DNA of 64,000 nucleotides from Entomortierella parvispora E1425 (Eukaryota > Fungi > Mortierellomycota). Positions 26,466 to 64,000 of this stretch are shown here, piece after piece (the stretch's first letter is position 1; each line of letters opens with the position of its first letter). The notes under the pieces are model-generated. The model had not been told where the DNA came from and did not search any database. It worked only from the letters and a program-made list of their open reading frames with translations. The stretch lies in NCBI GenBank assembly GCA_020891255.1, contig BQFW01000001.1:124001-188000 (forward strand), read 5' to 3'. Position numbers and translations under genes: made by a program.

Positions 26466-28703
26466 ATGGACGAAGACTATGACAATAACAACAATAAGCT
26501 AGGCGTGCATGCGCTCGACCTTCCTGAACTTAGAGTCCTCCTCTCGACCTACTTTCTCGGCGATCTTCCCACCCTATCCATCTGTTCTCGCGTCAGCAAA
26601 TCCTGGCATGCAACCTTCAATCCTTTGATCTGGCGCTCGCTCCATGCCTCCAAGCTCCTGCCGAAAGGATGTCTCACCTCACAAGGGATCCAACACAACT
26701 CTCAACATATCTACCATCTTCGACTTGGAAAGGCCTATCCAGATCGATACCCCTTGGAGCACTGTCAGAGTCTCCGAACGTTGGCTATTGAGAAGGAGTG
26801 GTCAGATGAGCGTACTGATTGGGATCATCTGGGCGTCTCCAATCAGTATTTCTATGTAGCCACGGTGACGCCGACGCCTGCTATAACCACAACGACAGAC
26901 CCCCCTACATCCACTATCGCCGCCACTGCTGGCGCTTTGACCACTACAACCACCACGACCACAACTACAACAACGACTACAGTTTTGTCTGCAAATGAAG
27001 CAACGGCGTCCACTTCTGTACAGACGACCACCCTGTCGTCGTCCTCCCTGTTCTCAGAGCCAGCGTATGCATCCGGAGAAGGATCATCGGGATCGGGAAG
27101 TGGAAGCAGGAGAGACAGTGTTAGCAGCATCAGCAGCGACGATAGTTTGGCTAGTATCGCCAGCCTCAACGGCGTCAGTAGCATCGGTTCGGTCGGCTCT
27201 AGAGGCAACAATATCAGTGACCAAGAGGATTGGATGGAGGCGCTGGCAAAGCTTATTCGGCAGAACCCTGGACTGGAGCAATTGAGTCTGATGATGGACC
27301 GATTCCAGCCTTCAGCTTCATTCTGGAGAGCGGTTCAGACTTGTGGGAACCCTCGCGCAAATTTGGCTGAACACACTGTCGGCACAGACAGTGGTAATGT
27401 TGGCGCAGACATGGCTCCTACAGGACATCGAGGGCTTCGGAATGTGCTATACCTCAACACTCGAATCCCTCGATCGATGATGAGCTACTTTTTGGATGCG
27501 TTTGAGCATCTCGAAAGTCTCGTTATTCAGAACTGTATCTTTGATGCATCCCCGTTTTATACACTCGTGGATCGGAGGTTCCCGAACCTGCGCTCGCTCA
27601 CCATCAAGACCAACCTCTGTCTGGACCTGGCCTCTCAACTTCAAATGATTCGGTGCTTCCCCAGCCTCCAGTCTTTGACATGGTCCATCATGAGCAACCA
27701 CCATCTGCCGATCCAAGAGGTCTGTGATCTCTTGCAGTTGGATTGCCCCAAGATCGAGTCCTTGGCCCTTTCAGATCTCAACATGACCCCAACTCGATTG
27801 GAACGGGTCTTGCGATCGATGCGAAAACTGACACGACTGATTTTAACCATCGATACCGCGACTTCGATGATGAGCGATCCCCTGGTTATGGACGCGTTGG
27901 TGCAATGTGGTCATTTGGAAACGTTGAAGGATATTGAGTTTGGACAGAACAGGACAAAAATTGATTGCGGAACCATCTTGATGTTCTTGCAACATTGTCC
28001 CAAGCTGGAGAGGTTGGTCACGTATGGAAAGTTGGATTGCAGCCGACAGGCCATTTATCAGCCTTTGCAGCCGAATCTCCATGACCCGACCCATGTCCAT
28101 CACAGTCATGCCGGTGTGCCCGTGGCGGTGTCGATTTGGAGTCCCGAGAACGATGACAAGCGGTTGGCCCGAGATATCCCTTGGGTTTGTTTAGGGCTGA
28201 AGCGTCTTCAGGTGATCCTAACAGGCGATTCAAGAAACATGTGGCTGAACCCAGCACTACAGCAACGTGTGTTTACACAATTGGGTCGGTTGCATCAGTT
28301 GGAAAAATTGTCGCTGGGCCACACCATGCTCTGGATGTACTATAGCGGTATACATCATGGTCTGGATTTCTCGATCAAGGGCGTTCAAAGCGACCAGTAC
28401 CATCATCATCACAATCACCAGCAGCAAAATTACAGTCGCCACAAAAACGGTGGCAATGACACCAAAAATCGGGGCCAAGGCGTGGAGCGCCTTGCAGGCT
28501 TGAAGCGACTGGAGGAGTTAAACTTTGAAGGGATCCACCAACATTTGACCGTACCTGATTTAGAATGGATGTTGAAGAACTGGCCGAGGTTGAAGGTGCT
28601 GGATGGAGAATTAAACCCTGACAAGGGTGAGCGGGAAAAGTTGGATAAGTTCATGAAGGAGAACGGGTTCAAGATCACTCACCACTTGTATCGTCGTCGA
28701 TAG
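26466..28703 (+). CDS. F-box-like / LRR protein with Thr/Ser-rich insert, intronless
   Basis: HALDLPELRVLLSTYF...LSICSRVSKSWHATFNPLIW, LRR-like core, IPWVCLGLKRL and GLKRLEELNF...WPRL. ATG at 26466 (CCACCATGG) is preferred over the ORF-track start at 26307. Confidence 0.72.
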   Translation: MDEDYDNNNNKLGVHALDLPELRVLLSTYFLGDLPTLSICSRVSKSWHATFNPLIWRSLHASKLLPKGCLTSQGIQHNSQHIYHLRLGKAYPDRYPLEHCQSLRTLAIEKEWSDERTDWDHLGVSNQYFYVATVTPTPAITTTTDPPTSTIAATAGALTTTTTTTTTTTTTTVLSANEATASTSVQTTTLSSSSLFSEPAYASGEGSSGSGSGSRRDSVSSISSDDSLASIASLNGVSSIGSVGSRGNNISDQEDWMEALAKLIRQNPGLEQLSLMMDRFQPSASFWRAVQTCGNPRANLAEHTVGTDSGNVGADMAPTGHRGLRNVLYLNTRIPRSMMSYFLDAFEHLESLVIQNCIFDASPFYTLVDRRFPNLRSLTIKTNLCLDLASQLQMIRCFPSLQSLTWSIMSNHHLPIQEVCDLLQLDCPKIESLALSDLNMTPTRLERVLRSMRKLTRLILTIDTATSMMSDPLVMDALVQCGHLETLKDIEFGQNRTKIDCGTILMFLQHCPKLERLVTYGKLDCSRQAIYQPLQPNLHDPTHVHHSHAGVPVAVSIWSPENDDKRLARDIPWVCLGLKRLQVILTGDSRNMWLNPALQQRVFTQLGRLHQLEKLSLGHTMLWMYYSGIHHGLDFSIKGVQSDQYHHHHNHQQQNYSRHKNGGNDTKNRGQGVERLAGLKRLEELNFEGIHQHLTVPDLEWMLKNWPRLKVLDGELNPDKGEREKLDKFMKENGFKITHHLYRRR

Positions 28704-29809
28704 AGCCGTCGAACTCCCTTATAGATATAAGATTGTACAATAAATGCAGTGAAGATGATATTCACTAGAATGCTCTGCATGCTGCTCCGATCCCTTGGGA
28801 GGACTGATATCTCTGTCCGTTCTGCTTCATCTATCTGCTGCATCTGGCCAACGAGAAGAACCTGTTGATGATTGAAAGATGACTGAAGGAACAGACAGCT
28901 TGTTCGAGGTGGTGATCAAGCAGGAGGGATAAGTGGGAAAAGAAGGAGAACGGCAAGTTCCACATGAGAAGAAAAATAAAAAAAAAGAAAAATCAAAAAC
29001 TCGCTTTGTACATTTAGTTTTGTTCTGGTCCTCTGATTTCTCACCTCCAAGAGCCCTCATTGAGGAACCTTGGACCAAACTTTCCTGTTGAAGGTGTCAC
29101 GTCATCTCCATTGTACTCCAACCGTTGGATTATATGACCCAACAAACAATCGTCGGCTTCAGTTATGCCCATTGCGAAAGAGCACGCGGAAATTAACATT
29201 GATGTTCTGATCGCTTAGGAGGAGGAGGAAGATGAAGACGGACCACCGACTCGAACCGGATCCAGAGCTCGCCAAGTTAAGGCCAGTAAAGACAAAGCGC
29301 GGGTTCTGGCCAAGCCAATTGTTGAGCGGCGGCTGAAGGATCCATTGGTAGTCTCCGAACCGCCGATTCGTGCCAGATCCAAACGTCGCCAGGTTGAGGT
29401 CAGCACAGACTAATCGTCAGCTCTTGCCAAATAACCCCCCTGGGACAGCGGCCGGTGCATCAATTAACAACCTCTGTTGACGGCTGTTTGGGGCGAAGAC
29501 AACGGCTAGGACAAAAGCGCTGGTGTTTCCAAGCCCCACTGCCTCTCCCCCAGAGCCAACTTCGCTGCAGCTCATGCTGGGTCCACACCTGTAAGTTACG
29601 GTGCAAACCTTGAATCTGGCCAGTGTGCCTTTCCTACACAAACTGAAGATGCCCATTATCTAGGAGCCCTGCCAGTAGGGCGCACGTAATGTAGTATATC
29701 CTCATCCGTCCTTTGTTGAATAATGAAAAAAAAAAAAAAAAAAAAAAAAAAACAGAAATGAAATCCGACTTGGACCGTGCACAAGAGGACAGATCAAAAC
29801 ACCAATTGG

Positions 29810-31340
29810 TCGAAGCGCGTTTTTCCCCCTGGCGTCTCTCCCGTCTGCTCTCCTCTCATCGACTTCTCATGTCTCCATCTCTCCATGCCCTGCCTGCATC
29901 GCCCCATTCCACCATCCTTCTCCATCACCGCTCTTTCATCCATGCATTAGCCTCCATTCACTCCATCTCTCAGTCATCGACTTGATGCATCTCTTGATTC
30001 TCTTGGCATGGCGAGGTTTAACTGCACTTGTGAAGACTATTGAGGTCCAAAAGACCTGATCTCCTTCACAATGGTTGCCTTGGCTGACTTACCTTTCAAA
30101 CAAGATGATTCACACATGAGATCAACTTTAGTAGCGGGACAAATGGTCGAATGTTTATTCATCACCAACTTTGTAAAGTAGTAGTAGTAGTTTATTTTTT
30201 GAAGTTCTTTTTCGCAAGTCCATTTTTTTTTTTTGGTCAGAATTAAAGAGAGAAAACAAGAATTTTAATAATAGAGTGCTTTGAAATGGAGTGGAAGTGG
30301 AAGAGAGTGCTTTGAAAGTGGAAGAGAGTGCTATGGAAGTGGAAAAAAAGGGGAGAAAAGTTAAGTTTCGAAGAAAAAAAATGGTTTGTGGAAGAGATAA
30401 AGTGAGTTGGCGTACCAAGTCCCCCGATGTTTGTTATAGATGCTGACGACTGCGTGCCATCACCACATCCCATCGGGGATCAAGGATTTGTGGAAGAAAC
30501 AAAGAGCAGTACCAAGTCCCCGATGTTCGCTGACGACTCTGGGCCATCACCTCATCACATCGGCATCATGGATTACGGCCCACTATCCTAACTACACTAG
30601 GGCTAAACTAACTAGTCTAGAAGCGAAGGAAGAGGGACGGAAGAAAAGGAAGTTTTCTCTCTTGATTCTTGTTTCTTGAATTCTTGTTTCTTGTTTCTTG
30701 GATGGGGGGCCCTAGACCAAAGAGGGCAGGGAGGCAACTGTGTTTGAGAGGCAGGCCAGGCGGTCTTGAGGGCCAAGGTCAAGTCTGAAAGGGTTGGATG
30801 ACCTTGAGGCCGAGGGAGGCTGAGGCTTGGGCCGGGGCAGGCAAGCGGGCAGGCGGTCTTGAGTCCGAGGCGGGTCTTGAGGGCCAAGGTCAAGCCATGA
30901 GAAGGCAGACAACTTTGAGGCCGAGGCTTGCGCTTGAAAGGGCGGGCAAGTTTGTGGCCAAAGGCTTGAAAGGGCAGGCAGGTTTGCGGCCAAAGACTTG
31001 AAAGGGCAGGCAGGTTTGCGGCCAAAGACTTGGAAGGGCAGGCAGGTTTGCGGCCAGAGTCTTGGAAGGACATGAAAGGTGGGCCGGGAAATCAAGACCG
31101 TTGGGACCGGGGCCAAGGAGGGCAGGACCGAAGCTGAAGGGCCGATGTCGTTGGACCGGAGTCACTTGTTGCTGGCCGATGGGAGGATGGAAGCATGGTG
31201 GTGTGTGCTTTATGTGCTTTGTGTGCTTTGTGTGCTTTGTGTGCTTTGTGTGCTTTGTGTGTCTGGAAGGGGAGTGAAGAAGAAAAGAAGGATGAGGAGC
31301 AAAAAAAAGAGGGGGAATCATGGGGGGTATTTGTATGAAA
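29810..31340 (+). repeat. Left arm of large palindrome (inverted repeat), with internal 32-bp and 9-bp tandem subrepeats
   Basis: Reverse complement of 31769-33300. Mirrored ORFs 30155..30418/32696..32959, 30243..30473/32641..32871 and 30440..30679/32435..32674 have identical translations; their coordinates sum to 63114 (axis ~31557). Confidence 0.95.
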
Positions 31341-31768
31341 AGTGTTTAACTTATCGACTGCGGCCCCCCCACGACATGGCGACATGAGGGAGGGAGGAAA
31401 TCGATTGGTCCAAGGGTGAGAGAACAGCGAAGGAAGGATGGCGATAGGCCCGCCGAAACATGTGAAAGAGAAGATAAGCGAGAGAGCAGACGTTAACTTT
31501 GGGTGTAGAGCGAAAATAAGAGAACTGACTGCGCGTGGACGCGAAGTCAGACGTGCCATTTTGCCATGGAGGATGAAAATAAGGGAACTGGCCACGCGTG
31601 AACGGGCCATTTTTGCCATGGTGGATGAAAATAAGGTGGCAGATGGCGACGCGTTTTCGCTTTTTTTTTGAAATTTGGTGAAATTCTGAAAAACAATGAT
31701 GGCTTGGCGGATGAAAACAAAACAACATCCTCAACTTGGGCGAAGTACGGTCCACCTCCAACAGTCCC
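31341..31768. other. Unique 428-bp spacer of the palindrome containing three ~52-63 bp direct repeats
   Basis: GAAAATAAG at 31512, 31575 and 31627; GCCATTTT(T)GCCATGG at 31555 and 31606; ACGCGT at 31594 and 31649. Confidence 0.8.
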
Positions 31769-33300
31769 TTTCATACATATACCCCCATGATTCCCCCTCT
31801 TTTTTTGCTCCTCATCCTTCTTTTCTTCTTCACTCCCCTTCCAGACACGCAAAGCACACAAAGCACACAAAGCACACAAAGCACACAAAGCACATAAAGC
31901 ACACACCACCATGCTTCCATCCTCCCATCGGCCAGCAACAAGTGACTCCGGTCCAACGACATCGGCCCTTCAGCTTCGGTCCTGCCCTCCTTGGCCCCGG
32001 TCCCAACGGTCTTGATTTCCCGGCCCACCTTTCATGTCCTTCCAAGACTCTGGCCGCGAACCTGCCTGCCCTCCAAGACTCTGGCCGCAAATCTGCCTGC
32101 CTTTCCAAGTCTCTGGCCGCAAACCTGCAAACCTGCCTGCACTTTCAAGTCTTGGGCCGCAAGGTTGCCTGCCTTTTCAAGCTCAAGCCTCGGCCTAAAA
32201 GTTGTCTGCCTTCTCATGGCTTGACCTTGGCCCTCAAAACCTGCCTCGGCCACAAGACCGCCTGCCCGCTTGCCTGCCCCGGCCCAAGCCTCAGCCTCCC
32301 TCGGCCTCAAGGTCATCCAACCCTTTCAGACTTGACCTTGGCCCTCAAGACCGCCTGGCCTGCCTCTCAAACACAGTTGCCTCCCTGCCCTCTTTGGTCT
32401 AGGGCCCCCCATCCAAGAAACAAGAAACAAGAATTCAAGAAACAAGAATCAAGAGAGAAAACTTCCTTTTCTTCCGTCCCTCTTCCTTCGCTTCTAGACT
32501 AGTTAGTTTAGCCCTAGTGTAGTTAGGATAGTGGGCCGTAATCCATGATGCCGATGTGATGAGGTGATGGCCCAGAGTCGTCAGCGAACATCGGGGACTT
32601 GGTACTGCTCTTTGTTTCTTCCACAAATCCTTGATCCCCGATGGGATGTGGTGATGGCACGCAGTCGTCAGCATCTATAACAAACATCGGGGGACTTGGT
32701 ACGCCAACTCACTTTATCTCTTCCACAAACCATTTTTTTTCTTCGAAACTTAACTTTTCTCCCCTTTTTTTCCACTTCCATAGCACTCTCTTCCACTTTC
32801 AAAGCACTCTCTTCCACTTCCACTCCATTTCAAAGCACTCTATTATTAAAATTCTTGTTTTCTCTCTTTAATTCTGACCAAAAAAAAAAAATGGACTTGC
32901 GAAAAAGAACTTCAAAAAATAAACTACTACTACTACTTTACAAAGTTGGTGATGAATAAACATTCGACCATTTGTCCCGCTACTAAAGTTGATCTCATGT
33001 GTGAATCATCTTGTTTGAAAGGTAAGTCAGCCAAGGCAACCATTGTGAAGGAGATCAGGTCTTTTGGACCTCAATAGTCTTCACAAGTGCAGTTAAACCT
33101 CGCCATGCCAAGAGAATCGAGAGATGCATCGAGTCAATGACTGAGAGATGGGGTGAATGTAAGGCAAATGAGCATGCATGCGTTTGAACGAATGGAATGC
33201 TGGAAGAAGGATGGAGGGATGCAGAGATGGAATGGAAGCATGGCCACCAAAGAGGACGCGCTTCGCCCAAAGATCAAAGAAAAGAGCCCATTTTTTTTGT
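31769..33300 (-). repeat. Right arm of large palindrome
   Basis: Inverted copy of 29810-31340. Apparently identical over ~32260-33117, more diverged in the 32-bp array and distal to 33117. Confidence 0.95.
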
Positions 33301-34870
33301 CTTCTTTGTCCTGCTTTGTCCTTTGTCCTTCTGGTCCTGTGGACCTCTGGTCCTCACTCTTCTGAGCCAATGCACCCACCTCTCATCTCCATGGATCATG
33401 AGTGAATATGGTATCTGTTCATTCTTCCTGCCCCCGCTCTCTGGTCAACAGCATATATTGTCCATCGTTTTGCCACAGGCCTTATCTCTAATGGCTCCAA
33501 GGACCAACAACGGCCACATAGATTCGAGGTTGTCTCTTCTTTATTTTTCTCTGCGCCCTCAAACTAATACTATCTATCGGCTCGCAAATGACGATTCATC
33601 ATCTATTGTACATCTTTCATAAAGCCCTGATGGTTTTACAAAATGGCAGGCGTCAATTGACGCAGTTGCTATGGACGACAAGAGTTTGAACATTAGAAGG
33701 CAAAGAGTCCATTCAGTTCTCGTGTGGAAACAAAAAGTTGTCGAGACATCAAAACCTCGCAGGAGATTGCTGTTATTTTTTCTTTTTCTGCATCTCTTTT
33801 GTTCTGGTTCTTGCTTTCGTTTCTTGTGGGTGGGCTGTCCTATCTGAAGAGAGGGCATCCTCCGTGGTCTTTCTCGGCTTTTACTGCGCTTCTTGGATCC
33901 AACTGCAGTGGAAGCAGCGTTGATACCAGAGGAAGGACCTTACCTCTGCATCTTGTTGTCCGCTCAGTGTTTGCAGAATGTCAATTTGATGTTCCAACAC
34001 ATGCAAAGATGAAGGCAAGACAATTATAGCGGTGTATGGCTCGGGTTGTCTGTTTATGCCTTGATGTCTAATGATTGTCATCGAAGAGCCATCCACAATT
34101 GTTTAGGGACGGTGATAGCTGCTGTAGATTAAGGTAGTTGATTTCGAGCGACACCTCTCGTGAAGCGGCACTTCAAACCGTGTATGCTCATGATTGTTGA
34201 TCAGCGACGGTGGCAATGCGCTAATTGATGCCCTTTCATCCCACGTTGAGGTGTAGAGAGTTGATGCTTGATGTTTGAGTGGCATCTATTGTGGTACTCT
34301 TGTGTTGCTGGTTCTCGGTTACGTAGGAATGAGCGGCGACGAGTGATAAGATGACGCCCAGATTCCCGCGTCCAGAGATGTTGGTCGAATATATGATAAA
34401 TGGGCGGTACGTAGTATCTGTTGTCCGTCACTGTATTTCAAGTCTTGGCGTTGACGATGTCGAGAAACAGGAGAATCTCGGATTCCACGTATTCGATGAG
34501 GATGGGTGGGTACAGAATAACGGATGGCGGGGTGGTATCCGTGGCTAGGCTTTCACGTTACATGACTTGAGGTTTTGGTGTTGATGATGGCAACTGACAA
34601 ATGAATGGCCAGTGGTCCTGAATCCAATTAGGACGGATAGATGCAAGATAGCTGGATGGCATCCATGGACAGACTCTCGTCTCGCTGGCCCTTGCATTTG
34701 GGTTCTGGTGTTGACGGGGGGCAGGTTGCATGGATGTTCCTACGTCCATGAAGCTGGATGGACAAGAGGAAAGGACGGTATCTATCGTTGAGTTTCCGTC
34801 TCGCCGGGTCTTGTGATCTGGATGATGATGTTGACGAGGGGCAGATTGGATGGATGCTGCCGCCAGAGTT
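33300..34870 (-). repeat. Non-coding block contiguous with the right arm; inverted homologue of ~61900-63450
   Basis: Colinear inverted peptide matches in the ORF track: FLVGGLSY (33724..34029 vs 62675..62923), ESGRHLIT (34201..34431 vs 62328..62510), LTRGRLDGC (34813..35010 vs 61883..62092). Confidence 0.88.
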
Positions 34871-35021
34871 GGAATTATCGCCTCCTTTGTTTTGACCGGA
34901 TCATGACTTTTGGTAGAGCAATGTTGTGGGTATTGTTCAGAGAATGGCGCTTGAAAAATTCATGGAGACTCCAAAATGCTTTTATTGAAGGAATGGCCAG
35001 AAGGCTCTAGAAAGAAACCTC

Positions 35022-37828
35022 TCACGGCGCGTCAGTGGACGAAGGGACAAAGGTGATAGCTGTTCCAAGGTATTCGAGCAATGACTTTTCACGGAAGCTC
35101 TGAATCTCTCCAAACTGGTTCCTACGTGGGTACTGTATGATGCAGTCAACCACTCGTTCTAGAAAAGAGGAGGGAGGATTAAAGAAGATATTGTTAGTTG
35201 TCATAAACGAGGATAGAGAAAAGCAAGAGACGAGGCAGGTAAGGCAGGCGAACTTACTGGGATCAATAGTTTTGCCTGAGGACTCCACAACCTTCAAAAA
35301 GTTTTCAATCTCCAGCTGCAACGCCGGGATTCCAAACGTGTAATAATACAGAAGCATGTCGTCGTTGGATACAGTGCTGCCTGTGCCAATAACAGTGCTC
35401 TCACGAAGAACCGAAGCAGCCATCCATTGAATCACAAACTTAAGCTGCATATCGCCTCCAAAGGCACCACAGCCCCAGTTGCCCGTAGCAATGGGATGAG
35501 ACGTCAAAGAGTCCTGCAAATGGATCGAAGGTCGGAATCCAACCAAGCATTTGTTGAACTCTCGCAAGATCGAGTACCGCTCGAACTGGTTCAGACGCGA
35601 GATCTTTGACTTGAAGGGGGTCGCATCGATGGCACAAATATTAGTCATCCGACGACCAAGAGCGTCACTAGAATGAGATATGAACGTCAGAGACCAGATT
35701 TGTTTTAAGATAATGAAATCCGTACGATGCTGTGCAGTTCTCTACTTACCGAGGGACTGGATCCTTGTGATCAGAGTACCATTCAAAGGTCTTGCTGTAT
35801 CCAATGTAATTCGAATACCTTTCGGCGCCTTTGATCAGCAAGGACTCGTTGGCCTCCAATTGAGTAGTGAACAGCCGCGAAATGATCAATTCAGGACAAA
35901 TCATGAATCGGATCTCTTCTTGTACGGCGCCCTACAAAGTCGATTCCAGTCAGATGTCACCCTTCTACACAGACAAGCAATCCTAATAGCATTCATAAGA
36001 TGCTTACCCTGTCTAAAGCACCACCGCCAATGTTCTTGTTGGCAAAATCCATCTGTAGAGCGGCTTGTGGAGCCTCTTCTAGAGGAGTAACCGAGTCCAC
36101 GTTGACCTTGTGGAAATGGAATCCGTTGAGTTCACCAGTATCCTGACCGGCCTTGAGGTAAACTGGTTTCCTGATCACCTGCCGATGGTAAGTCACGGTT
36201 CCCGTAGGCACTATTGATTGAAAGTGAGGGGTTAGTTTTAGTACTTATAGTTAAAGAAAATTCTCCTTACGAATCTCAATAGTTGTGGGTGCTTACTTTC
36301 TGTGGTTACTCGGTCAAAGTAGTGCAGAATACATCGAAGCTTCGCGGCCTGGGCGGTTGAACAGGGGGTCAAGCTCGAGGTGTCTTCGGCCCAAAACAGG
36401 CTGATAAAGTTAATCGAAGGCATCTTAGGGCCACGCTCGTCCTTCTTTTCCTTGGCATCGTCGACCACAGCCAAGTTTTCGACGCCAGAGGCGAGTGCGC
36501 TCAAACACTCAGCCTTCAGCCTAGCGCAGAGCTCCGAGGGTTCGCCGTCTTCAAAGAACTCAAATAAGGCCGCTGTGCCTTTAGCTCTTCGCTTCCTGGG
36601 GGGTCGAGGCTCGTTAATTGTGCTAAACACGTTCTTCTTGCCTCCACGACCAGACGCCTGGCCACCACCTCGACCCCCTCGGTTGGAAGATCCGCCGCGG
36701 CTAGATGCTCCACCACGAGTCGCCTTAGTCGTGGATACAGAGCCCTTGTCTTTCCTCTTAAGGACCTTTCGATCGTTGGCCTCATCGTTGGAGTCTTCGG
36801 AGTCATCTTCGTCATCCTCAGGCTGATCATTTTGCTGTTGTTGACCTCCAGAAGAGCTGGATCTCTTGAATCCAGGCCTCTTGGTGAACCGCCTGCTTCG
36901 CTTGTTGGGGACGTTTCGACAAGGGAAAGTATTGAAAAAGGCATTGGCGAGCAAGCAGGCAATCTGTTCCTGAGAGAGCGTAATGGCCGAATCCTGCTGT
37001 TGCATAAGAAACGGGATTGGCTTGTGAACAAGTTCTGGTAACCTCAGAGCAAGTGCCTGCATCCTTGGCAAAATCACGTCAAAGAATCGGGTCCGTTCCT
37101 GGAGACTCAAGTACTGACTCTTCAAAGGTGCAGAAGACAGTTGAGGAGAGGAAGAGGAGGTCCAGGCGTTGGAGGCCGACAAAGATGGAGTACTGGAGCC
37201 TTGCTCCTGCTGGCGAAGGACATGCTCCTGTCGTTGAGCTTCCAACCATTTCTGGTGGTGTTCCTCATCCAAGATCCGATCTTCCTCATCATCGTAGCTG
37301 TCGTCCTGAGAGTCGAAGCGGTCCTTGGTGGCCAATCGATCCTCCTCGTCCAGGATTTCGGCTTCCTCAGACAAGGTGCCTTGATCATGAGTCGATTCGT
37401 ACAGACTGTGGGCATTCAGAAAGTACTCGAGGACCTTAATGTTCCAAGTCTGCTCCTTAGCCTTGTTCCATCGAAGCATGACTTCAGACAGTTGGTCCGT
37501 GTTGGTGATCTTCGTTTGGAGACCTTCGACAATCTCAGGCCACTGGGAGACGTCGTTGTAGTGTCGCTTGGAGCAAGGCAAGCGGACGTGCTCGTTGTCC
37601 CAGCTGTCCTGGAATTCTTCAGGGAAGGAGGGCTGATCGAGACCGGGGATCTATGACCAAAGAAGCGAGGTTTATGTAAGTTTGTCACTGGTTTGTCATG
37701 CATGCTTTGGTAGCACAGGATCGCTTGGGGGCGGATGCCACCTCTACCTTGCAGAGAAGGAGGTTGGGCCCGGTTTCAAAGTACTGGGACGACGCGTCGC
37801 TGCTAGAGCTGGAGTTGGAGCAGGACAT
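35022..37828 (-). CDS. PARG: Poly(ADP-ribose) glycohydrolase (exons 37828-37748, 37650-36297, 36210-36008, 35931-35750, 35667-35258, 35158-35022)
   Basis: Spliced catalytic signature [32 protein letters not shown], plus GAERYSNYIGY, ATGNWGCGAFGGD and DSWDNEHVRLPCS. GT-AG introns keep the frame. Confidence 0.93.
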
Positions 37829-59819: not shown

Positions 59820-62150
59820 GTGGATATCCCATCCAGCAGCGCGAATCTATCCATCGTCATACTTTGCAGGGACATCAGCAAGTGCTTTTTATTCTCTTGC
59901 CATCATCAACAGTCAAGACACTGGACCAAGTGAGACGGCCTCACAACAACAATGAATACCCATCTCAGCCCCCTGAATCCGTCCATCGTCATAGAATCCA
60001 AGGACATCATCGAGTGCCTCTAATTATTCTCTTGCCACCGCCGACGCTCAAGACACTAGAGCAAGTAAGATGGGATCACGACAGCCGTTGTCATCTCAGC
60101 AGCACGAATCCTTCCATCCTCATAGGATGCAGGGGATATCTCCAAGCGCCTTTCACCCTCTTGTCATCATCAACACTGAAGACATTGGAGCAAGTGCGGC
60201 TGGTCACAACAACCGATGTTCGTCTCAGCACCCGAATCCATCTGTGCGGGGCAATCATCGAGTACTTTTCATCGTCAACACTCTGAAAAGAGAATTCAAC
60301 AACGGATGTCACCGCAGTACCTGTATCCACCCTGCCACAAACGATGAGCCAGCAGTGGTAGCTTTTGGTCTTTCACCGCCAGAATCACTCGATGCACACC
60401 ACCATTCAACAGATGCTACAAAGCATTCCACATCCATTTCCACAGGATACATTGGCATCAAAAAAAACCCCCCTCCACGCCGCCATTGTCGCCGTATGCT
60501 TCCTGGAGTCTGCCACCTCAAAAGACAGTGAAGCAAGGTACAATACTGACACCTTCAGCGACCAGCAGTGAACGCCTCAAAAGACGGAGACGAGAGATAG
60601 CAGCAAGGGCACCTTTCCATCCAGCTTTCCATCCCTCCAACCGTCTCCAAAGGGTGCAGGGATGTCATCGGGTGTCTTCTGGCAGATACTCAATCTCCGT
60701 CGGCGGGAATCCAGGTTTAATGTCTACCACGTTTGGTATCAGCTAGTGGTTGATCCTCGGGTGCTCAATTGCCTCCAACATATCTGGATCCCAGGTCGTA
60801 GTTGTAAGACTTGGCGTCGACTGCAGCACTTCCGTCAAGCTCCTGAATCCACCACTTGCGCCACAGGGACATCTCAAATTGACCATCATCCCCTACAATG
60901 GTGGCAACACACGACGGTCGTTTGTTTGGTTCGACTTCTCTTTTGGTTCACAACCACTGCTCAGGACCACAAAACCGGTCGTAGTGACCATCCGTCTATG
61001 GATGCCACCCAAATACCATCACGCCATTATTCAAGATTTCAAGAGCGACTTACCCCAATATCCAGAGTCCATCTGTTCTCATGAATCAAGGAATGTAGTG
61101 AGAATCCGGCTCTATCGTCGCTACTATTCACCATTCGCAACTCCCAAGATCTCAAAGGACAACATGTGTCTCTTGCAGCATCTGTCAGTCAATACCCCCA
61201 AAACAACCGCAACACTCAAGAACCCAAGAGCCATCGAAGAACAATCTTGTCATTTTTACCTACCTATCCGCACTGGGTGCAAGGAGATACACGGGTGACG
61301 TCTGATCCGACAGGAGGCCAACAATGGATACCGCCTAGCCATCCTGAATCCGTCGCATTGGGTGCAGGATTCAGGGACAACAACGGATGTTGTTTTACTC
61401 CTCGCCACCATCAACTCCCAGGACCCGAAGATCTGATGGATGCTTATTTTACCAATTTGCATCCATCCGTACTCATCAGATTCAGGGGTATTATACAGTC
61501 GGATCTCTTGTCACCCTAGTCGCAACCACCGATACGCAACCATCGACTTCAGAACTTCAGATTCTGATCACCCTGCAAAAGATACCGCCCATTCATATCG
61601 CATCCATCCTTCGTCAAAGGATGCAGGGCCATTAGAAGTGGTCTGGCATCCCGGCACTATCAACACTCAAATCTTAACATATGGCGAGACAGGAACACAA
61701 CAAGGATATCACCAAGTCAATTACATCCAAACGGTCACCAAATGGTGCAGAGATGTTGATAAGTGTCTTGCATCTCGGCACAATCAACAGCCAAATCTCA
61801 AGATTCAGCGAGACGTGAGCTCAACAATGGATACCTGGATATCTTCCATTCCTCTTACCCATCCATCTTGGATGCAGGAATATCAACAAGTGTCGTCTTG
61901 CCCATCATCACTATCAAATCCAACAACGCAAGAGACGACGTGTGAGCCCACAGCGGATGCCACCCTGCATCCATCCAACCTGCCCCTCGTCAACATTAGA
62001 ACCCAAATCGCAAGGGCTAGCGAGACGAGAGTCAGCCAATGGATACTATCCAGCTGCTCGCATTCATCCATCCTAATTGGATGCAGGACCATTGGCGATC
62101 AATTTGTCAGTCGCTATCATCAACACCAGAACCTCAACCTCAAGACTTGT
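59820..62150. repeat. Degenerate ~130-bp tandem array with a recurrent CATCC-n-GGATGCAGG hairpin motif
   Basis: (C/G)AAGACA(C/T)T(G/A)GA(C/G)CAAG at ~59914, 60048 and 60178 (periods ~134 and ~130). Progressively decayed units continue to ~62100, e.g. CATCCTCATAGGATG at 60115 and CATCCATCTTGGATG at 61860. Confidence 0.7.
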
Positions 62151-64000
62151 AACGTGAAGGCCTAGCCACGGATACCACCCCACCATCCGTCATCCTGCCC
62201 CCCGCATCCTCATCGGATATATGCGGAATCAGAGATTCTCCTGTTTCTCGATATCGTCAACGCAAAAATTTTGAAATCCAGTAAGAGGGCACCGCTCATT
62301 CATCATACATTCAAGAAACATCATTAGATGCAAGAATCTGGGCGTCATCTTATTACAGTCGCCGCTCAGTCCCACTTAGCCGGGATCCGGCAACATAAGA
62401 TCACCACAATGGATCCCACTCAAACATCAAACAACAGCCCTCTATACCTCGACATGGGACGAAAAGCCATCAATTGGGCCATTACCACCGTCACTAATCA
62501 ACAATCATGAACGTACACGGTATGAAGTGCCGCTCCACGAGAGGTCTCGCTTTGAAATCAACTACCTTAATCTACAGCAGCTATCACTGTCTCTATACAA
62601 TTGTGGATGGCTCTCCGACGACAATCATTAGACATTAAGGAATAGCCAGACAAAGCCCAAGTTAGACACTGCTGTTATTGTCTTGCCTTCATCTTTGTAT
62701 ATACTGAAACATCAAATTGAGCTACTCCACCCACCGGCATTTTCACATTCTGTAGACACAGAGCGGACAACAAGATGCAGAGGTAAGGTCCCTCATCTGG
62801 TATCAACGCATCAACGCTGCTTCCTCTACAGTTGAATTCTAGAAGCGCGATGAGAGCCGAGAAAGACCATAGAGGATACCATCTCTTCGGATAGGACAGC
62901 CCACCCACAAGAAACGAAAACAAGGATCAGAACAAAAGAGATGCAAAAGAGAAAAAAAAATCAGCAGTCTGCCAACGGGGCTTTGATGTCTCGACAACTC
63001 TTCACTCTTTGTTTGCACACAGAGAACGGAATGGACTCTTTGCCTTCTAATCTTCAAACTCACTCTTGTCTCCCTAGCGATTGGGTCAATTGACACCATA
63101 CATTTGGTAAAACCATCAGGGCTTTATGAAAGATCTACAATAGATGATGAATGAAAAGATGATAAAGATTCTCTATCCCTCAAACTGATATGATCTGTCA
63201 GTTCGCACGGAAAGTGGCTGGCAATGGACAGATGATGTTTGCACGGGCACAGGTATAATGAAGGAGATGGGTCGGTGAAAGACAGAAAGAGACAGCTTTG
63301 AATCTGGGTGGCAGTTGTTGGCCCTTTCAGCGGCCCTTGCAGCCAATGGAAACCAGGCCAGTGGCACAACGATCTGCAATAGATGAAGTGGATCAGAGAG
63401 GAGGGGACAGGCAGGATGAACCATATTGTATGAAGATGATAGATGGATGCGTTGGCTCAGAAGAATGAGGGCCAGAGGTCCACAGGACCAGAAGGACAAA
63501 GAAGGACAAAGCAGGACAAAGAAGGCAAAAAAAAAAAACGGGCTCTTTTCTTTGATCTTTGGGCGAAGCGCGTCCTCTTTGGTGTTCATTCTCCCCATGC
63601 TTCCATTCCATCTCTGCATCCCTCCATCCTTCTTCCAGCATTCCATTCCTTCAAGCGCATGCATGCACATTTGATTTACATTCACTCCATCACTCCATCT
63701 CTCGGTCATTGACTCGATGCATCTCTAGATTCTCGTGCCCTGGCGCGTTTAACACTGGTGCAGACTACTGAGGTCCAAAAGAGCTGATCTCATTCACAGT
63801 GATTGCCTTGGATGACTTATTCCCTTTCAGACAAGATCATTCACACATGAGGTCAACTTTAGTAGCGGGACAAATGGTCTACTGTTTATTCATCACCAAC
63901 TTGTAAAGTAGTTCCCTTTTTTTTTTTTTTGAAGTCTTTTTTTTTTGGTCAGAATTAAAGAGAGAAAACAAGAATTTTAATAGAGAGCTATGAAAAGGAG
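61900..64000 (+). repeat. Third, diverged copy of the palindrome arm plus its flanking block; runs off the window end
   Basis: 63700-64000 matches 29970-30290 in direct orientation (CACACATGAG.TCAACTTTAGTAGCGGGACAAATGGTC...GGTCAGAATTAAAGAGAGAAAACAAGAATTTTAA). 61900-63720 is the reverse complement of 33120-34870, roughly 80-85% identical by eye. Confidence 0.9.

What the first reader, a model, noticed from the sequence alone, without database searches (positions are those of the whole stretch)
29810..33300. 3.5 kb palindrome with homogenised arms in a 6.3 kb gene-free interval
Seen: arms of ~1.5 kb around a 428-bp spacer. About 29997-30855 and 32260-33117 look identical (three mirrored ORF pairs translate identically), while the outer ~190 bp, the 32-bp array and the third copy at 63.7 kb are diverged. 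It lies between convergent 3' ends (28703 and 35022). Inference: an identical core with diverged edges suggests arm-to-arm gene conversion or a recent fold-back duplication. Known analogues are IR-type regional centromeres (Komagataella phaffii, Candida tropicalis), Foldback transposons with subrepeat-laden TIRs and hairpin-RNA loci feeding RNAi. The extra arm copy 30 kb away weakens the centromere reading.
Basis: partly seen in the sequence, partly recalled or inferred. Interest (0 to 1): 0.75.

Follow-up and report, generated by a model that had tools for sequence, protein, structure and literature searches.

The report
Gene-converting palindrome from a repeat family
The 3.2-kb mirror-image repeat is real, but it is one of 17 related non-coding repeat loci in this soil fungus rather than a centromere; its two halves keep overwriting each other, and each half holds a ~290-base core kept almost unchanged in all 27 copies, which may be an undescribed RNA gene.

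Summary
The arms (29945-31340 and 31769-33170) are 97.2% identical around a 428-bp spacer, with a perfect 866-bp core (29996-30861 = reverse complement of 32253-33118).

The locus is not unique. A model of the arm core finds 27 intact copies at 17 loci (10 palindromes, 7 single arms) on three of 20 contigs, mostly C1 0.15-0.8 Mb. That rules out a one-per-chromosome centromere.

- **Arm homogenisation:** in 7 of 8 palindromes examined the two arms are each other's nearest relatives (94-99.9% against 86-93% between loci). Perfect runs are far longer than chance allows, and the window's arm differences are variants shared with other copies. This is an old structure undergoing arm-to-arm gene conversion, not a recent fold-back or an artefact.
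- **Not a classical Foldback transposon:** palindrome edges differ between copies, and I found no target-site duplication or transposase. The unit (spacer + arm + 1.75-kb flank, 31341-34914) is non-coding.
- **New here:** a ~290-bp core in each arm (30375-30660) is 97.7% identical between loci, with about three-fold fewer private substitutions. It folds into two hairpins and ends in a T-run. It may be an unknown RNA gene, but transcription is untested.

Earlier notes of this scan report converting palindromes elsewhere in this genome.

The parts
28806..29752 (+). Unrelated retroposon-like element ('LF'), 5'-truncated here and ending in an A27 tail (29726-29752). It sits inside the outer part of the left arm.
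   Evidence: A27 tract. Related copies occur on at least 9 contigs without any palindrome nearby. Other copies extend 200-460 bp further at the 5' end. The same junction with the arm is seen in c222, C6, c672, c383 and c497.
29755..29944 (+). Diverged outer part of the left arm ('LF-inner'). It is part of both arms in the C6 and C10 copies.
   Evidence: It matches the outer arms of the C6, C10 and c299 copies. It is only about 65% similar to the right-hand counterpart 33101-33246.
29945..31340 (+). Left arm of the palindrome.
   Evidence: 97.15% identical to the reverse complement of 31769-33170.
29996..30861 (.). Perfectly identical tract (mirror: 32253-33118), read as a recent arm-to-arm conversion tract.
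   Evidence: No differences in 866 bp. The permutation maximum was 423.
30375..30660 (-). Conserved non-coding core of the left arm. On the outward-reading (-) strand it forms two homologous ~45-nt hairpins and ends in a T8 run (30381-30374).
   Evidence: 97.7% identity between loci and 0.9% gaps, against 79-88% identity and 20-35% gaps in the neighbouring arm. Private substitutions are 0.16 per site against 0.24-0.52. Consensus fold. 27 of 27 genome hits are full length.
30933..31069 (+). 32-bp tandem array, 4.3 copies. The mirror array at 32038-32162 has a different copy number. This is the most diverged segment between the arms.
   Evidence: In this segment the right arm carries variants specific to copy c245.
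31202..31261 (+). 9-bp tandem array, 6.7 copies (mirror: 31846-31905).
31341..31768 (+). Unique spacer (type A). It holds a 40-bp motif at 31371-31410 found only in this family, 52-bp direct repeats (31559-31636) and two ACGCGT sites.
31769..33170 (-). Right arm of the palindrome.
32454..32739 (+). Conserved core of the right arm, the mirror of 30375-30660 (approximate limits). The model hit itself lies at window 32533-32692.
   Evidence: Model hit at C1:156533-156692, + strand.
33171..34914 (+). Right flank ('RF'), a non-coding continuation of the repeat unit beyond the palindrome. It has a sharp outer end at 34909-34914.
   Evidence: Contiguous with the arm in five copies that differ only by indels. 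The terminus is shared by W, c484, c235 and c663. No codon periodicity, and most indels are not multiples of three.
61968..64000 (-). Third copy, a 'solo' unit (RF, then arm) that runs off the window end. It continues to about C1:189743 and has no inverted partner.

Best explanation
This is one of ten palindromic loci, plus seven single-arm derivatives, of a lineage-specific non-coding repeat unit of about 3.6 kb (spacer + 1.4-kb arm + 1.75-kb outer part). The unit has been copied as DNA, without its neighbouring genes, into different places on three contigs of a Mortierella-type fungus.

Shown:
- The family and its common architecture.
- The two arms of a locus are kept more alike than copies at different loci, by patchy, recurrent arm-to-arm gene conversion.
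- The arms also carry tracts shared with other loci.
- Each arm holds a ~290-bp core that is almost invariant and intact in all 27 copies.

Inferred:
- The palindrome arose once, and solo copies are palindromes that lost an arm through breakage in the spacer.
- Occasional crossovers between arms flip the spacer.
- The core is the selected part. It is most likely a gene for an undescribed structured RNA of about 290 nt, read outward from the centre and ending at the T-run. On that reading the palindrome is a mirror-image pair of such genes, protected from decay by conversion.

How the unit moves (transposition in trans or ectopic duplication) is not resolved.
For: Family: a DNA search of the genome finds full palindromic copies on C6 and C10 and many on C1. 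The core model finds 27 full-length hits, 174-199 bits, always diverging from the centre.

Concerted evolution: arm identity within a locus is 94-99.9%, against 86-93% between loci, and the partner arm is the nearest neighbour in 7 of 8 loci. Perfect runs of 866, 552, 434, 317, 292 and 112 bp occur in six loci, all with P<=0.007 by permutation. The spacer/arm junction is the same in all palindromes, which points to a single origin.

Mosaicism: the window's right arm carries states specific to c245, and the left arm carries states specific to c672.

Copied without neighbours: the F-box-like and PARG genes have no paralogues beside other copies, and homology stops about 100 bp from each gene.

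Solos derived from palindromes: they break at spacer positions of about 341, 352, 395 and 410.

Spacer flips: the motif strand relative to the retroposon-bearing arm is one way in W, c299 and c383, and the other way in c222 and C6.

Core: 97.7% identity and 0.9% gaps against 79-88% and 20-35%. Private substitutions are three-fold fewer (P=6e-18). It is not coding: 8 of 22 arms have frameshifts and the substitutions are mostly non-synonymous. There are two hairpins with invariant stems and variable loops. G.U pairs favour the outward strand (-77 against -57 kcal/mol), and this strand also carries the T-run.
Against: There are no RNA data, so transcription of the core, or of anything in the interval, is unproven. 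The fold is not significantly better than shuffled sequence (z = -1.5), and there is essentially no covariation because the core hardly varies. No A/B box, TATA box or upstream E-box was found, and there is no Rfam family. A T4 run lies inside the proposed transcript. Core conservation could instead reflect a DNA-binding site or preferential exchange between loci. No GC bias of conversion was detected. The spacer-flip inference assumes that the retroposon insertion happened once. Several loci (c383, c497, c568, c235) were seen only as coordinates.
Confidence: 0.6

Rival explanations
1. It is a non-autonomous Foldback-type (long-TIR) DNA transposon. The arms are terminal inverted repeats with subrepeats, a transposase encoded elsewhere mobilises the element, and the conserved core is the transposase-binding or other cis-acting site.
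For: It is a dispersed family copied without neighbouring genes. It has long inverted arms containing 32-, 21/22- and 9-bp tandem subrepeats. The outer end on the RF side is sharp in several copies. One locus (C1:235 kb) looks like an internally deleted derivative that keeps both outer parts.
Against: The palindrome edges fall at different family positions in each copy, and homology continues asymmetrically beyond them. No target-site duplication is seen at the palindrome edges or the block edges. No transposase domain is present in any copy or extension. The conserved part is internal, about 450-900 bp from either end of the arm, not terminal. Resident copies show fewer private substitutions in the core, which is not expected for dead copies. 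The copies are confined to three contigs.
Confidence: 0.2
2. It is a hairpin-RNA locus. Read-through from the convergent flanking genes, or from its own promoter, gives a transcript that folds into about 1.4 kb of double-stranded RNA. That RNA is diced into small RNAs which silence the repeat family or nearby genes.
For: The arms are 97% complementary around a 428-bp loop. Both neighbouring genes point into the interval. An earlier first-stage note proposed the same for the sister copy at C1:222 kb.
Against: There is no transcript or small-RNA evidence of any kind. The idea does not explain why only a 290-bp core is conserved, nor why single-arm copies keep the core intact.
Confidence: 0.1
3. 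It is an inverted-repeat regional centromere of the Komagataella or Candida tropicalis type.
For: The size and layout (a unique core between ~1.4-kb inverted repeats in a 6.3-kb gene-free interval between convergent genes) resemble those centromeres. This comparison rests on my own knowledge of those systems and was not tested here.
Against: There are 17 loci: at least 13 on contig 1 within 650 kb, 3 on contig 10, 1 on contig 6 and none on 17 other contigs. The window itself holds a second copy 30 kb away.
Confidence: 0.02
4. It is a recent fold-back duplication or an assembly or library artefact.
For: There is a perfect 866-bp stretch.
Against: The arms differ by 28 substitutions and several indels clustered in patches, with different array copy numbers. 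The flanks are asymmetric, with a retroposon on one side only. The differences are shared with other family members. Nine other diverged palindromes have the same architecture.
Confidence: 0.03

Closest known systems
Arm-to-arm gene-converting palindromes of mammalian sex chromosomes (e.g. human Y palindrome P6; PMC3723533)
   Same: Inverted arms around a unique spacer are kept more alike than their age predicts, by non-reciprocal exchange in tracts of hundreds to thousands of bases. There are rare crossovers that invert the spacer. The arms carry the functional units.
   Different: Those are unique segmental duplications of 10 kb to Mb scale that carry protein-coding genes, with >99.9% arm identity and GC-biased conversion. 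Here the arms are 1.4-2.4 kb and non-coding, arm identity is 89-99.9%, and no GC bias was detected. The structure also exists as a dispersed family of 17 loci.
Foldback (FB) transposons of Drosophila and FB-like elements (own knowledge; mentioned in PMC6431247)
   Same: A dispersed family with kilobase-long inverted arms containing tandem subrepeats, a short unique centre and mostly no coding capacity.
   Different: In FB elements the arms are the element termini and are built almost wholly of subrepeats. FB elements have target-site duplications, and some copies carry a transposase. None of these features was found here, and the conserved part is internal to the arm.
Actively maintained long inverted repeats around gene pairs in C. 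elegans (PMC1803023), and other converting palindromes noted earlier in this same genome
   Same: Mirror-image duplicates of a functional unit are homogenised within a locus. The earlier scan notes (unchecked) describe such palindromes, including one read as a pair of non-coding RNA genes.
   Different: Those are single loci. No sequence similarity to this family was found by the genome search or the notes look-up.
Inverted-repeat centromeres of Komagataella phaffii and Candida tropicalis (own knowledge)
   Same: A unique core of a few hundred bp to a few kb between kilobase-scale inverted repeats in a gene-free interval. In C. tropicalis the repeats are homogenised.
   Different: Those occur once per chromosome. 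This family has many copies on one contig and none on most.

Membership tests
Arm-to-arm converting palindrome | The arms of one locus are closer to each other than to paralogous copies that share the same palindrome origin. | tested here: met
   True in 7 of 8 loci: 94-99.9% within a locus against 86-93% between loci. The centre junction is common to all palindromes.
Arm-to-arm converting palindrome | Patchy identity: long perfect tracts next to diverged patches. | tested here: met
   Six of eight loci have perfect runs beyond permutation expectation, at different positions in the arm. In the window the run is 866 bp.
Arm-to-arm converting palindrome | GC-biased fixation of converted sites. 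| tested here: not met
   Substitutions shared by both arms: 80 weak-to-strong against 109 strong-to-weak. This does not differ from substitutions in one arm only or in solo copies. GC bias is a frequent feature of such palindromes, not a defining one.
Arm-to-arm converting palindrome | Spacer inversion by crossover between the arms. | tested here: inconclusive
   The orientation of the spacer motif relative to the retroposon-bearing arm differs between W/c299/c383 and c222/C6. The inference rests on the retroposon insertion being a single event.
Foldback-type DNA transposon | The inverted arms are the element's termini, with ends common to all copies. | tested here: not met
   The palindrome edges differ by copy, and homology runs on beyond them, asymmetrically.
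Foldback-type DNA transposon | A target-site duplication of fixed length. | tested here: not met
   None at the edges of five palindromes or at 28806/34914. Old copies may have lost theirs.
Foldback-type DNA transposon | Arms built of tandem subrepeats. | tested here: inconclusive
   Arrays of 32, 21, 15/22 and 9 bp occupy roughly a fifth of each arm. The rest of the arm is unique sequence.
Foldback-type DNA transposon | A transposase encoded by some family members or by a partner element. | tested here: not met
   No Pfam domain in the ORFs of the interval, the long C10 arms or the extensions. The only hits are neighbouring host genes. Partner elements elsewhere in the genome were not searched exhaustively.
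Inverted-repeat regional centromere | One per chromosome. | tested here: not met
   17 loci on 3 of 20 contigs, with at least 13 of them on contig 1.
Inverted-repeat regional centromere | CENP-A occupancy or Hi-C clustering. | not testable with these tools
   No chromatin data.
Hairpin-RNA (RNAi) locus | A transcript spanning both arms, and small RNAs of both polarities. | not testable with these tools
   No RNA data.
Polymerase III-type small RNA gene | A T-run terminator at the 3' end of the conserved region. | tested here: met
   T8 at 30381-30374 on the outward strand. At least T4-T9 is present in all aligned copies.
Polymerase III-type small RNA gene | An internal A/B box or an upstream TATA-type promoter. 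| tested here: not met
   No match to A-box, B-box, TATA or the E-box that earlier notes report before tRNA genes.
Polymerase III-type small RNA gene | A structure supported by covariation, or membership of a described RNA family. | tested here: inconclusive
   No Rfam match; the best hit scores 10.7 bits against a threshold of 120. Of 87 predicted pairs almost all are invariant, and only 1 has a double change. z = -1.5.

The most novel reading that the evidence does not exclude
Each arm carries a gene for a new, lineage-specific structured RNA of about 290 nt (two hairpins and a T-run end). It is present in 27 intact copies, and the fungus keeps most of them as mirror-image pairs so that gene conversion repairs them. 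On this reading the 'junk' palindrome family is a self-maintaining multi-copy RNA gene family of unknown function.
Probability: 0.3. Interest if true: 0.6.

Novelty: new variant of a known kind. Interest (0 to 1): 0.42.

Why it matters
Palindromes kept alike by gene conversion are well known as single, large, gene-bearing structures on sex chromosomes. Here the same process acts on a dispersed family of small non-coding palindromes in an early-diverging fungus. Ten independent replicates, plus seven single-arm controls, let conversion tracts, exchange between loci, spacer flips and arm loss be compared within one genome. The almost invariant 290-bp core, intact in all 27 copies while the surrounding repeat decays, marks a functional non-coding element that no database describes. 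If it is transcribed, it is a new RNA family, and it would be an example of palindromic arrangement serving to preserve non-coding genes. For genome annotation, the result also warns against reading such gene-free inverted repeats in Mortierellomycota as centromeres.

Tried and rejected
**Coding potential**
- The 268-270-aa arm ORF and its mirror images: several overlapping frames are open on the same C-rich strand, the frame differs between copies and the translation is low-complexity, so they are artefacts.
- A 54-121-aa ORF starting at 30427 inside the core: 8 of 22 arms are frameshifted and the substitutions are mostly non-synonymous, so I rejected it.
- The right flank: no codon periodicity, and only 6-7 of 28-30 indels are multiples of three.
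- Pfam on 25 ORFs of the interval and of other copies: nothing except neighbouring host genes.

**RNA and promoter signals**
- Rfam (two scans) and tRNA search: nothing.
- A/B box, TATA and E-box: none.

**Transposon signatures**
- Target-site duplications and terminal repeats at the palindrome edges and the block edges: none.

**Other tests**
- GC-biased conversion: no signal.
- The 40-bp spacer motif as a general palindrome-centre signal: it occurs only in this family and is missing from some members.
- Segmental duplication together with neighbouring genes: rejected for the window. It does hold for the pair C10:601 kb / C1:799 kb.
- Two metagenome scans (spacer motif, core 22-mer): 0 hits. 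Records near this genome may be excluded from that collection.
- Literature searches for Mortierella palindromes, foldback elements or centromeres: nothing relevant.

- The organism name (Entomortierella parvispora) comes from earlier scan notes and was not verified here.
Full report
**Observation.** The palindrome is in the sequence as described. BLAST of 29500-33600 against the window pairs 29945-31340 with 33170-31769: 1405 columns, 97.15% identity, 28 mismatches and 8 gap openings. That leaves a 428-bp spacer, 31341-31768. A global alignment of the arms has no difference between 29996-30861 and 33118-32253 (866 bp). There are 9 differences in the outermost 50 bp, about 30 in 30862-31049 (the 32-bp array, which also differs in copy number) and 4 in the inner 290 bp. 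In 2000 permutations of the 38 difference events the longest perfect run never exceeded 423 bp. Beyond 29945/33170 only about 60-65% similarity remains. It is the only large inverted repeat in the window.

**Context.** The window is contig 1, 124001-188000, of a 38.9-Mb, 20-contig genome. Earlier notes of this scan, which I did not check, name it Entomortierella parvispora, Mortierellomycota. An F-box-like ORF ends at 28703 on the + strand, and a PARG gene split over exons ends at 35022 on the - strand. The 6.3-kb interval between them has no Pfam, Rfam or tRNA match.

**A family, not a single locus.** Searching the genome with 29800-33400 finds complete palindromic copies on C6 (287 kb) and C10 (277 and 361 kb), and many copies on C1 between 153 and 801 kb. 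I merged the 30 fetched loci into 13 sites. All share the plan arm-spacer-inverted arm, or a single arm plus spacer. A covariance model of the arm core later gave the full census: 27 hits, all full length, at 17 loci. That is ten palindromes (C1:154/156, 222/224, 299/302, 383/385, 479/481, 497/499, 659/660 kb; C6:288/290; C10:278/280, 361/363) and seven single arms (C1:188, 246, 569, 612, 673, 799 kb; C10:602). Nothing was found on the other 17 contigs.

**Concerted evolution.**
- In an alignment of 22 arms, the two arms of a locus are 89.5-99.9% identical, against 86-93% between loci. In 7 of 8 loci the partner arm is the nearest relative.
- The junction between spacer and second arm is the same in all palindromes. 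So the palindrome arose once and predates the divergence between loci. Arms that had evolved independently should be at least as different as loci are.
- Six of eight loci show perfect runs (866, 552, 434, 317, 292 and 112 bp) beyond permutation expectation, at different places along the arm.
- The sites at which the window's arms differ are not new mutations. In the array segment the right arm carries states otherwise seen only in copy c245. At 30862-30872 the left arm carries states of c672.

The arms are therefore old mosaics, shaped by conversion between arms and probably also between loci. A recent fold-back duplication or an assembly artefact does not fit. I found no GC bias among substitutions shared by both arms.

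**The repeat unit and its edges.** The right flank 33171-34914 is contiguous with the arm in five copies that differ only by indels. It ends at the same point (34909-34914) in at least three to four copies. The unit is therefore spacer + arm + about 1.75 kb, window 31341-34914.

On the left, 28806-29752 is a different element. It ends in an A27 tail. It has relatives on at least nine contigs without any palindrome, and it extends 200-460 bp further at the 5' end elsewhere. It looks like a retroposon fragment lodged in the outer arm. The same junction recurs in five other loci, so the composite was copied after that insertion.

Palindrome edges differ from copy to copy: arms of 2383 bp at 99.2% in C10:276 kb, and about 1.5 kb in C6. 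I found no target-site duplication or terminal repeat at the palindrome edges or the block edges. The window's flanking genes have no paralogues near other copies, so the block was copied on its own. One pair (C10:601 kb / C1:799 kb) is a larger segmental duplicate that includes a downstream F-box-like ORF.

Single-arm copies carry the spacer and break off at different spacer positions, about 341, 352, 395 and 410. That suggests palindromes that lost an arm by breakage near the centre.

The strand of a spacer motif relative to the retroposon-bearing arm is one way in the window, c299 and c383, and the other way in c222 and C6. This is what crossovers between inverted arms would produce, as seen rarely in the human Y palindrome P6 (PMC3723533). 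The inference depends on the retroposon insertion being a single event.

**Non-coding, with a conserved core.**
- The long arm ORFs are artefacts of a C-rich, stop-poor strand (GC skew +0.24 and -0.28 in the two arms).
- The right flank shows no codon periodicity and mostly frame-breaking indels.
- Conservation along the arm is very uneven. 30426-30625 is 97.7% identical between loci with 0.9% gaps. The wider core 30375-30660 is at least 95% identical. The neighbouring arm is 79-88% identical with 20-35% gaps.
- Substitutions private to one lineage are 0.16 per site in the core, against 0.24-0.52 elsewhere (P=6e-18). So the resident copies themselves are being kept intact there, which is not expected for dead transposon copies.
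- All 27 genome hits to the core model are full length and score 174-199 bits. There are no partial or decayed hits, even at E<=1.
- The core is not coding: an ORF from 30427 is frameshifted in 8 of 22 arms, and its substitutions are mostly non-synonymous.
- The core contains an internal ~87-bp duplication. On the outward-reading strand each half forms a ~45-nt hairpin whose stems are invariant and whose loops vary, both between copies and between the two halves.
- G.U pairs make this strand fold better (-77.3 kcal/mol, z = -1.5) than the other (-57.4, z = +0.7). The conserved region ends on this same strand in a T8 run, with at least T4 in every copy.

These hints agree with an outward-transcribed structured RNA of about 290 nt, but they are weak. 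There is no covariation because there is too little variation. There is no promoter box and no Rfam family. No relatives turned up in two metagenome scans.

**Comparison with known systems.** Mechanistically the closest are palindromes homogenised by arm-to-arm conversion (PMC3723533, PMC1803023). In appearance the closest are Foldback transposons, but three defining features tested here were not met: arms as common termini, target-site duplication and an associated transposase. The hairpin-RNA idea remains possible and untested.

Earlier notes of this scan report other converting palindromes in this genome, one of them read as a pair of non-coding RNA genes. They also place a '3.2-kb palindrome' at the position of family copy c222. 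I could confirm only that a family copy lies there.

**Limits.** No RNA, chromatin or related-species data were reachable.

**Verdict.** The centromere and artefact readings are rejected. Foldback membership is not met. The new element of interest is the conserved core in each arm.

Noticed in passing
window 28806-29752: A retroposon-like element ending in an A27 tail. Related copies at 70-95% identity lie on at least nine contigs, and other copies are longer at the 5' end. It is nested in the outer arm of six palindrome-family loci at the same junction.
   Followed up: partly
L023:1-4510 (C10:600441-604950) and L029:1-4519 (C1:798133-802651): These two single-arm copies are part of a larger inter-contig segmental duplication, 92-96% identical to the end of the fetched DNA. 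It includes a downstream F-box-like ORF (Pfam PF12937, E about 1e-5).
   Followed up: partly
G000 C1:234789-236725 (not fetched): The left-flank element is joined almost directly (23 bp) to the distal right flank, as if the whole palindrome plus 1.2 kb had been deleted. Its outer flank is 99% identical to that of the copy 10 kb away (C1:226 kb), so it is a local duplication.
   Followed up: no
G000 C5:1103908-1105351, C6:771685-773059, C7:2120159-2121096, C7:2538270-2538845, C7:2782805-2783268, C8:2512497-2518294 (not fetched): Weak matches (72-88%) to the 32-bp-array and inner-arm segments on both strands, about 1-1.4 kb apart. They look like smaller, distantly related palindromes without the conserved core.
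   Followed up: no
window 31371-31410 and 31559-31654: The spacer holds a 40-bp motif found only in this family (15 genome hits; in type-B spacers it is duplicated at a 103-bp period). It also holds a 52-bp direct repeat and two ACGCGT (MluI-box-like) sites.
   Followed up: partly
window 30001-33000: Strong mirror-image strand asymmetry: GC skew is +0.24 in the left arm and -0.28 in the right, so the G-rich strand runs toward the centre on both sides.
   Followed up: no
window 31091-31200: A second, weaker conserved and gap-free stretch in the arm (92.4% identity between loci, 0.2% gaps), between the 32-bp and 9-bp arrays.
   Followed up: no
L012:3-1061 (C1:657087-658145, - strand): An ORF with a 3CxxC zinc-ribbon domain (PF13695) lies directly left of the C1:658 kb palindrome. 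Family copies sit beside unrelated genes at each locus.
   Followed up: no
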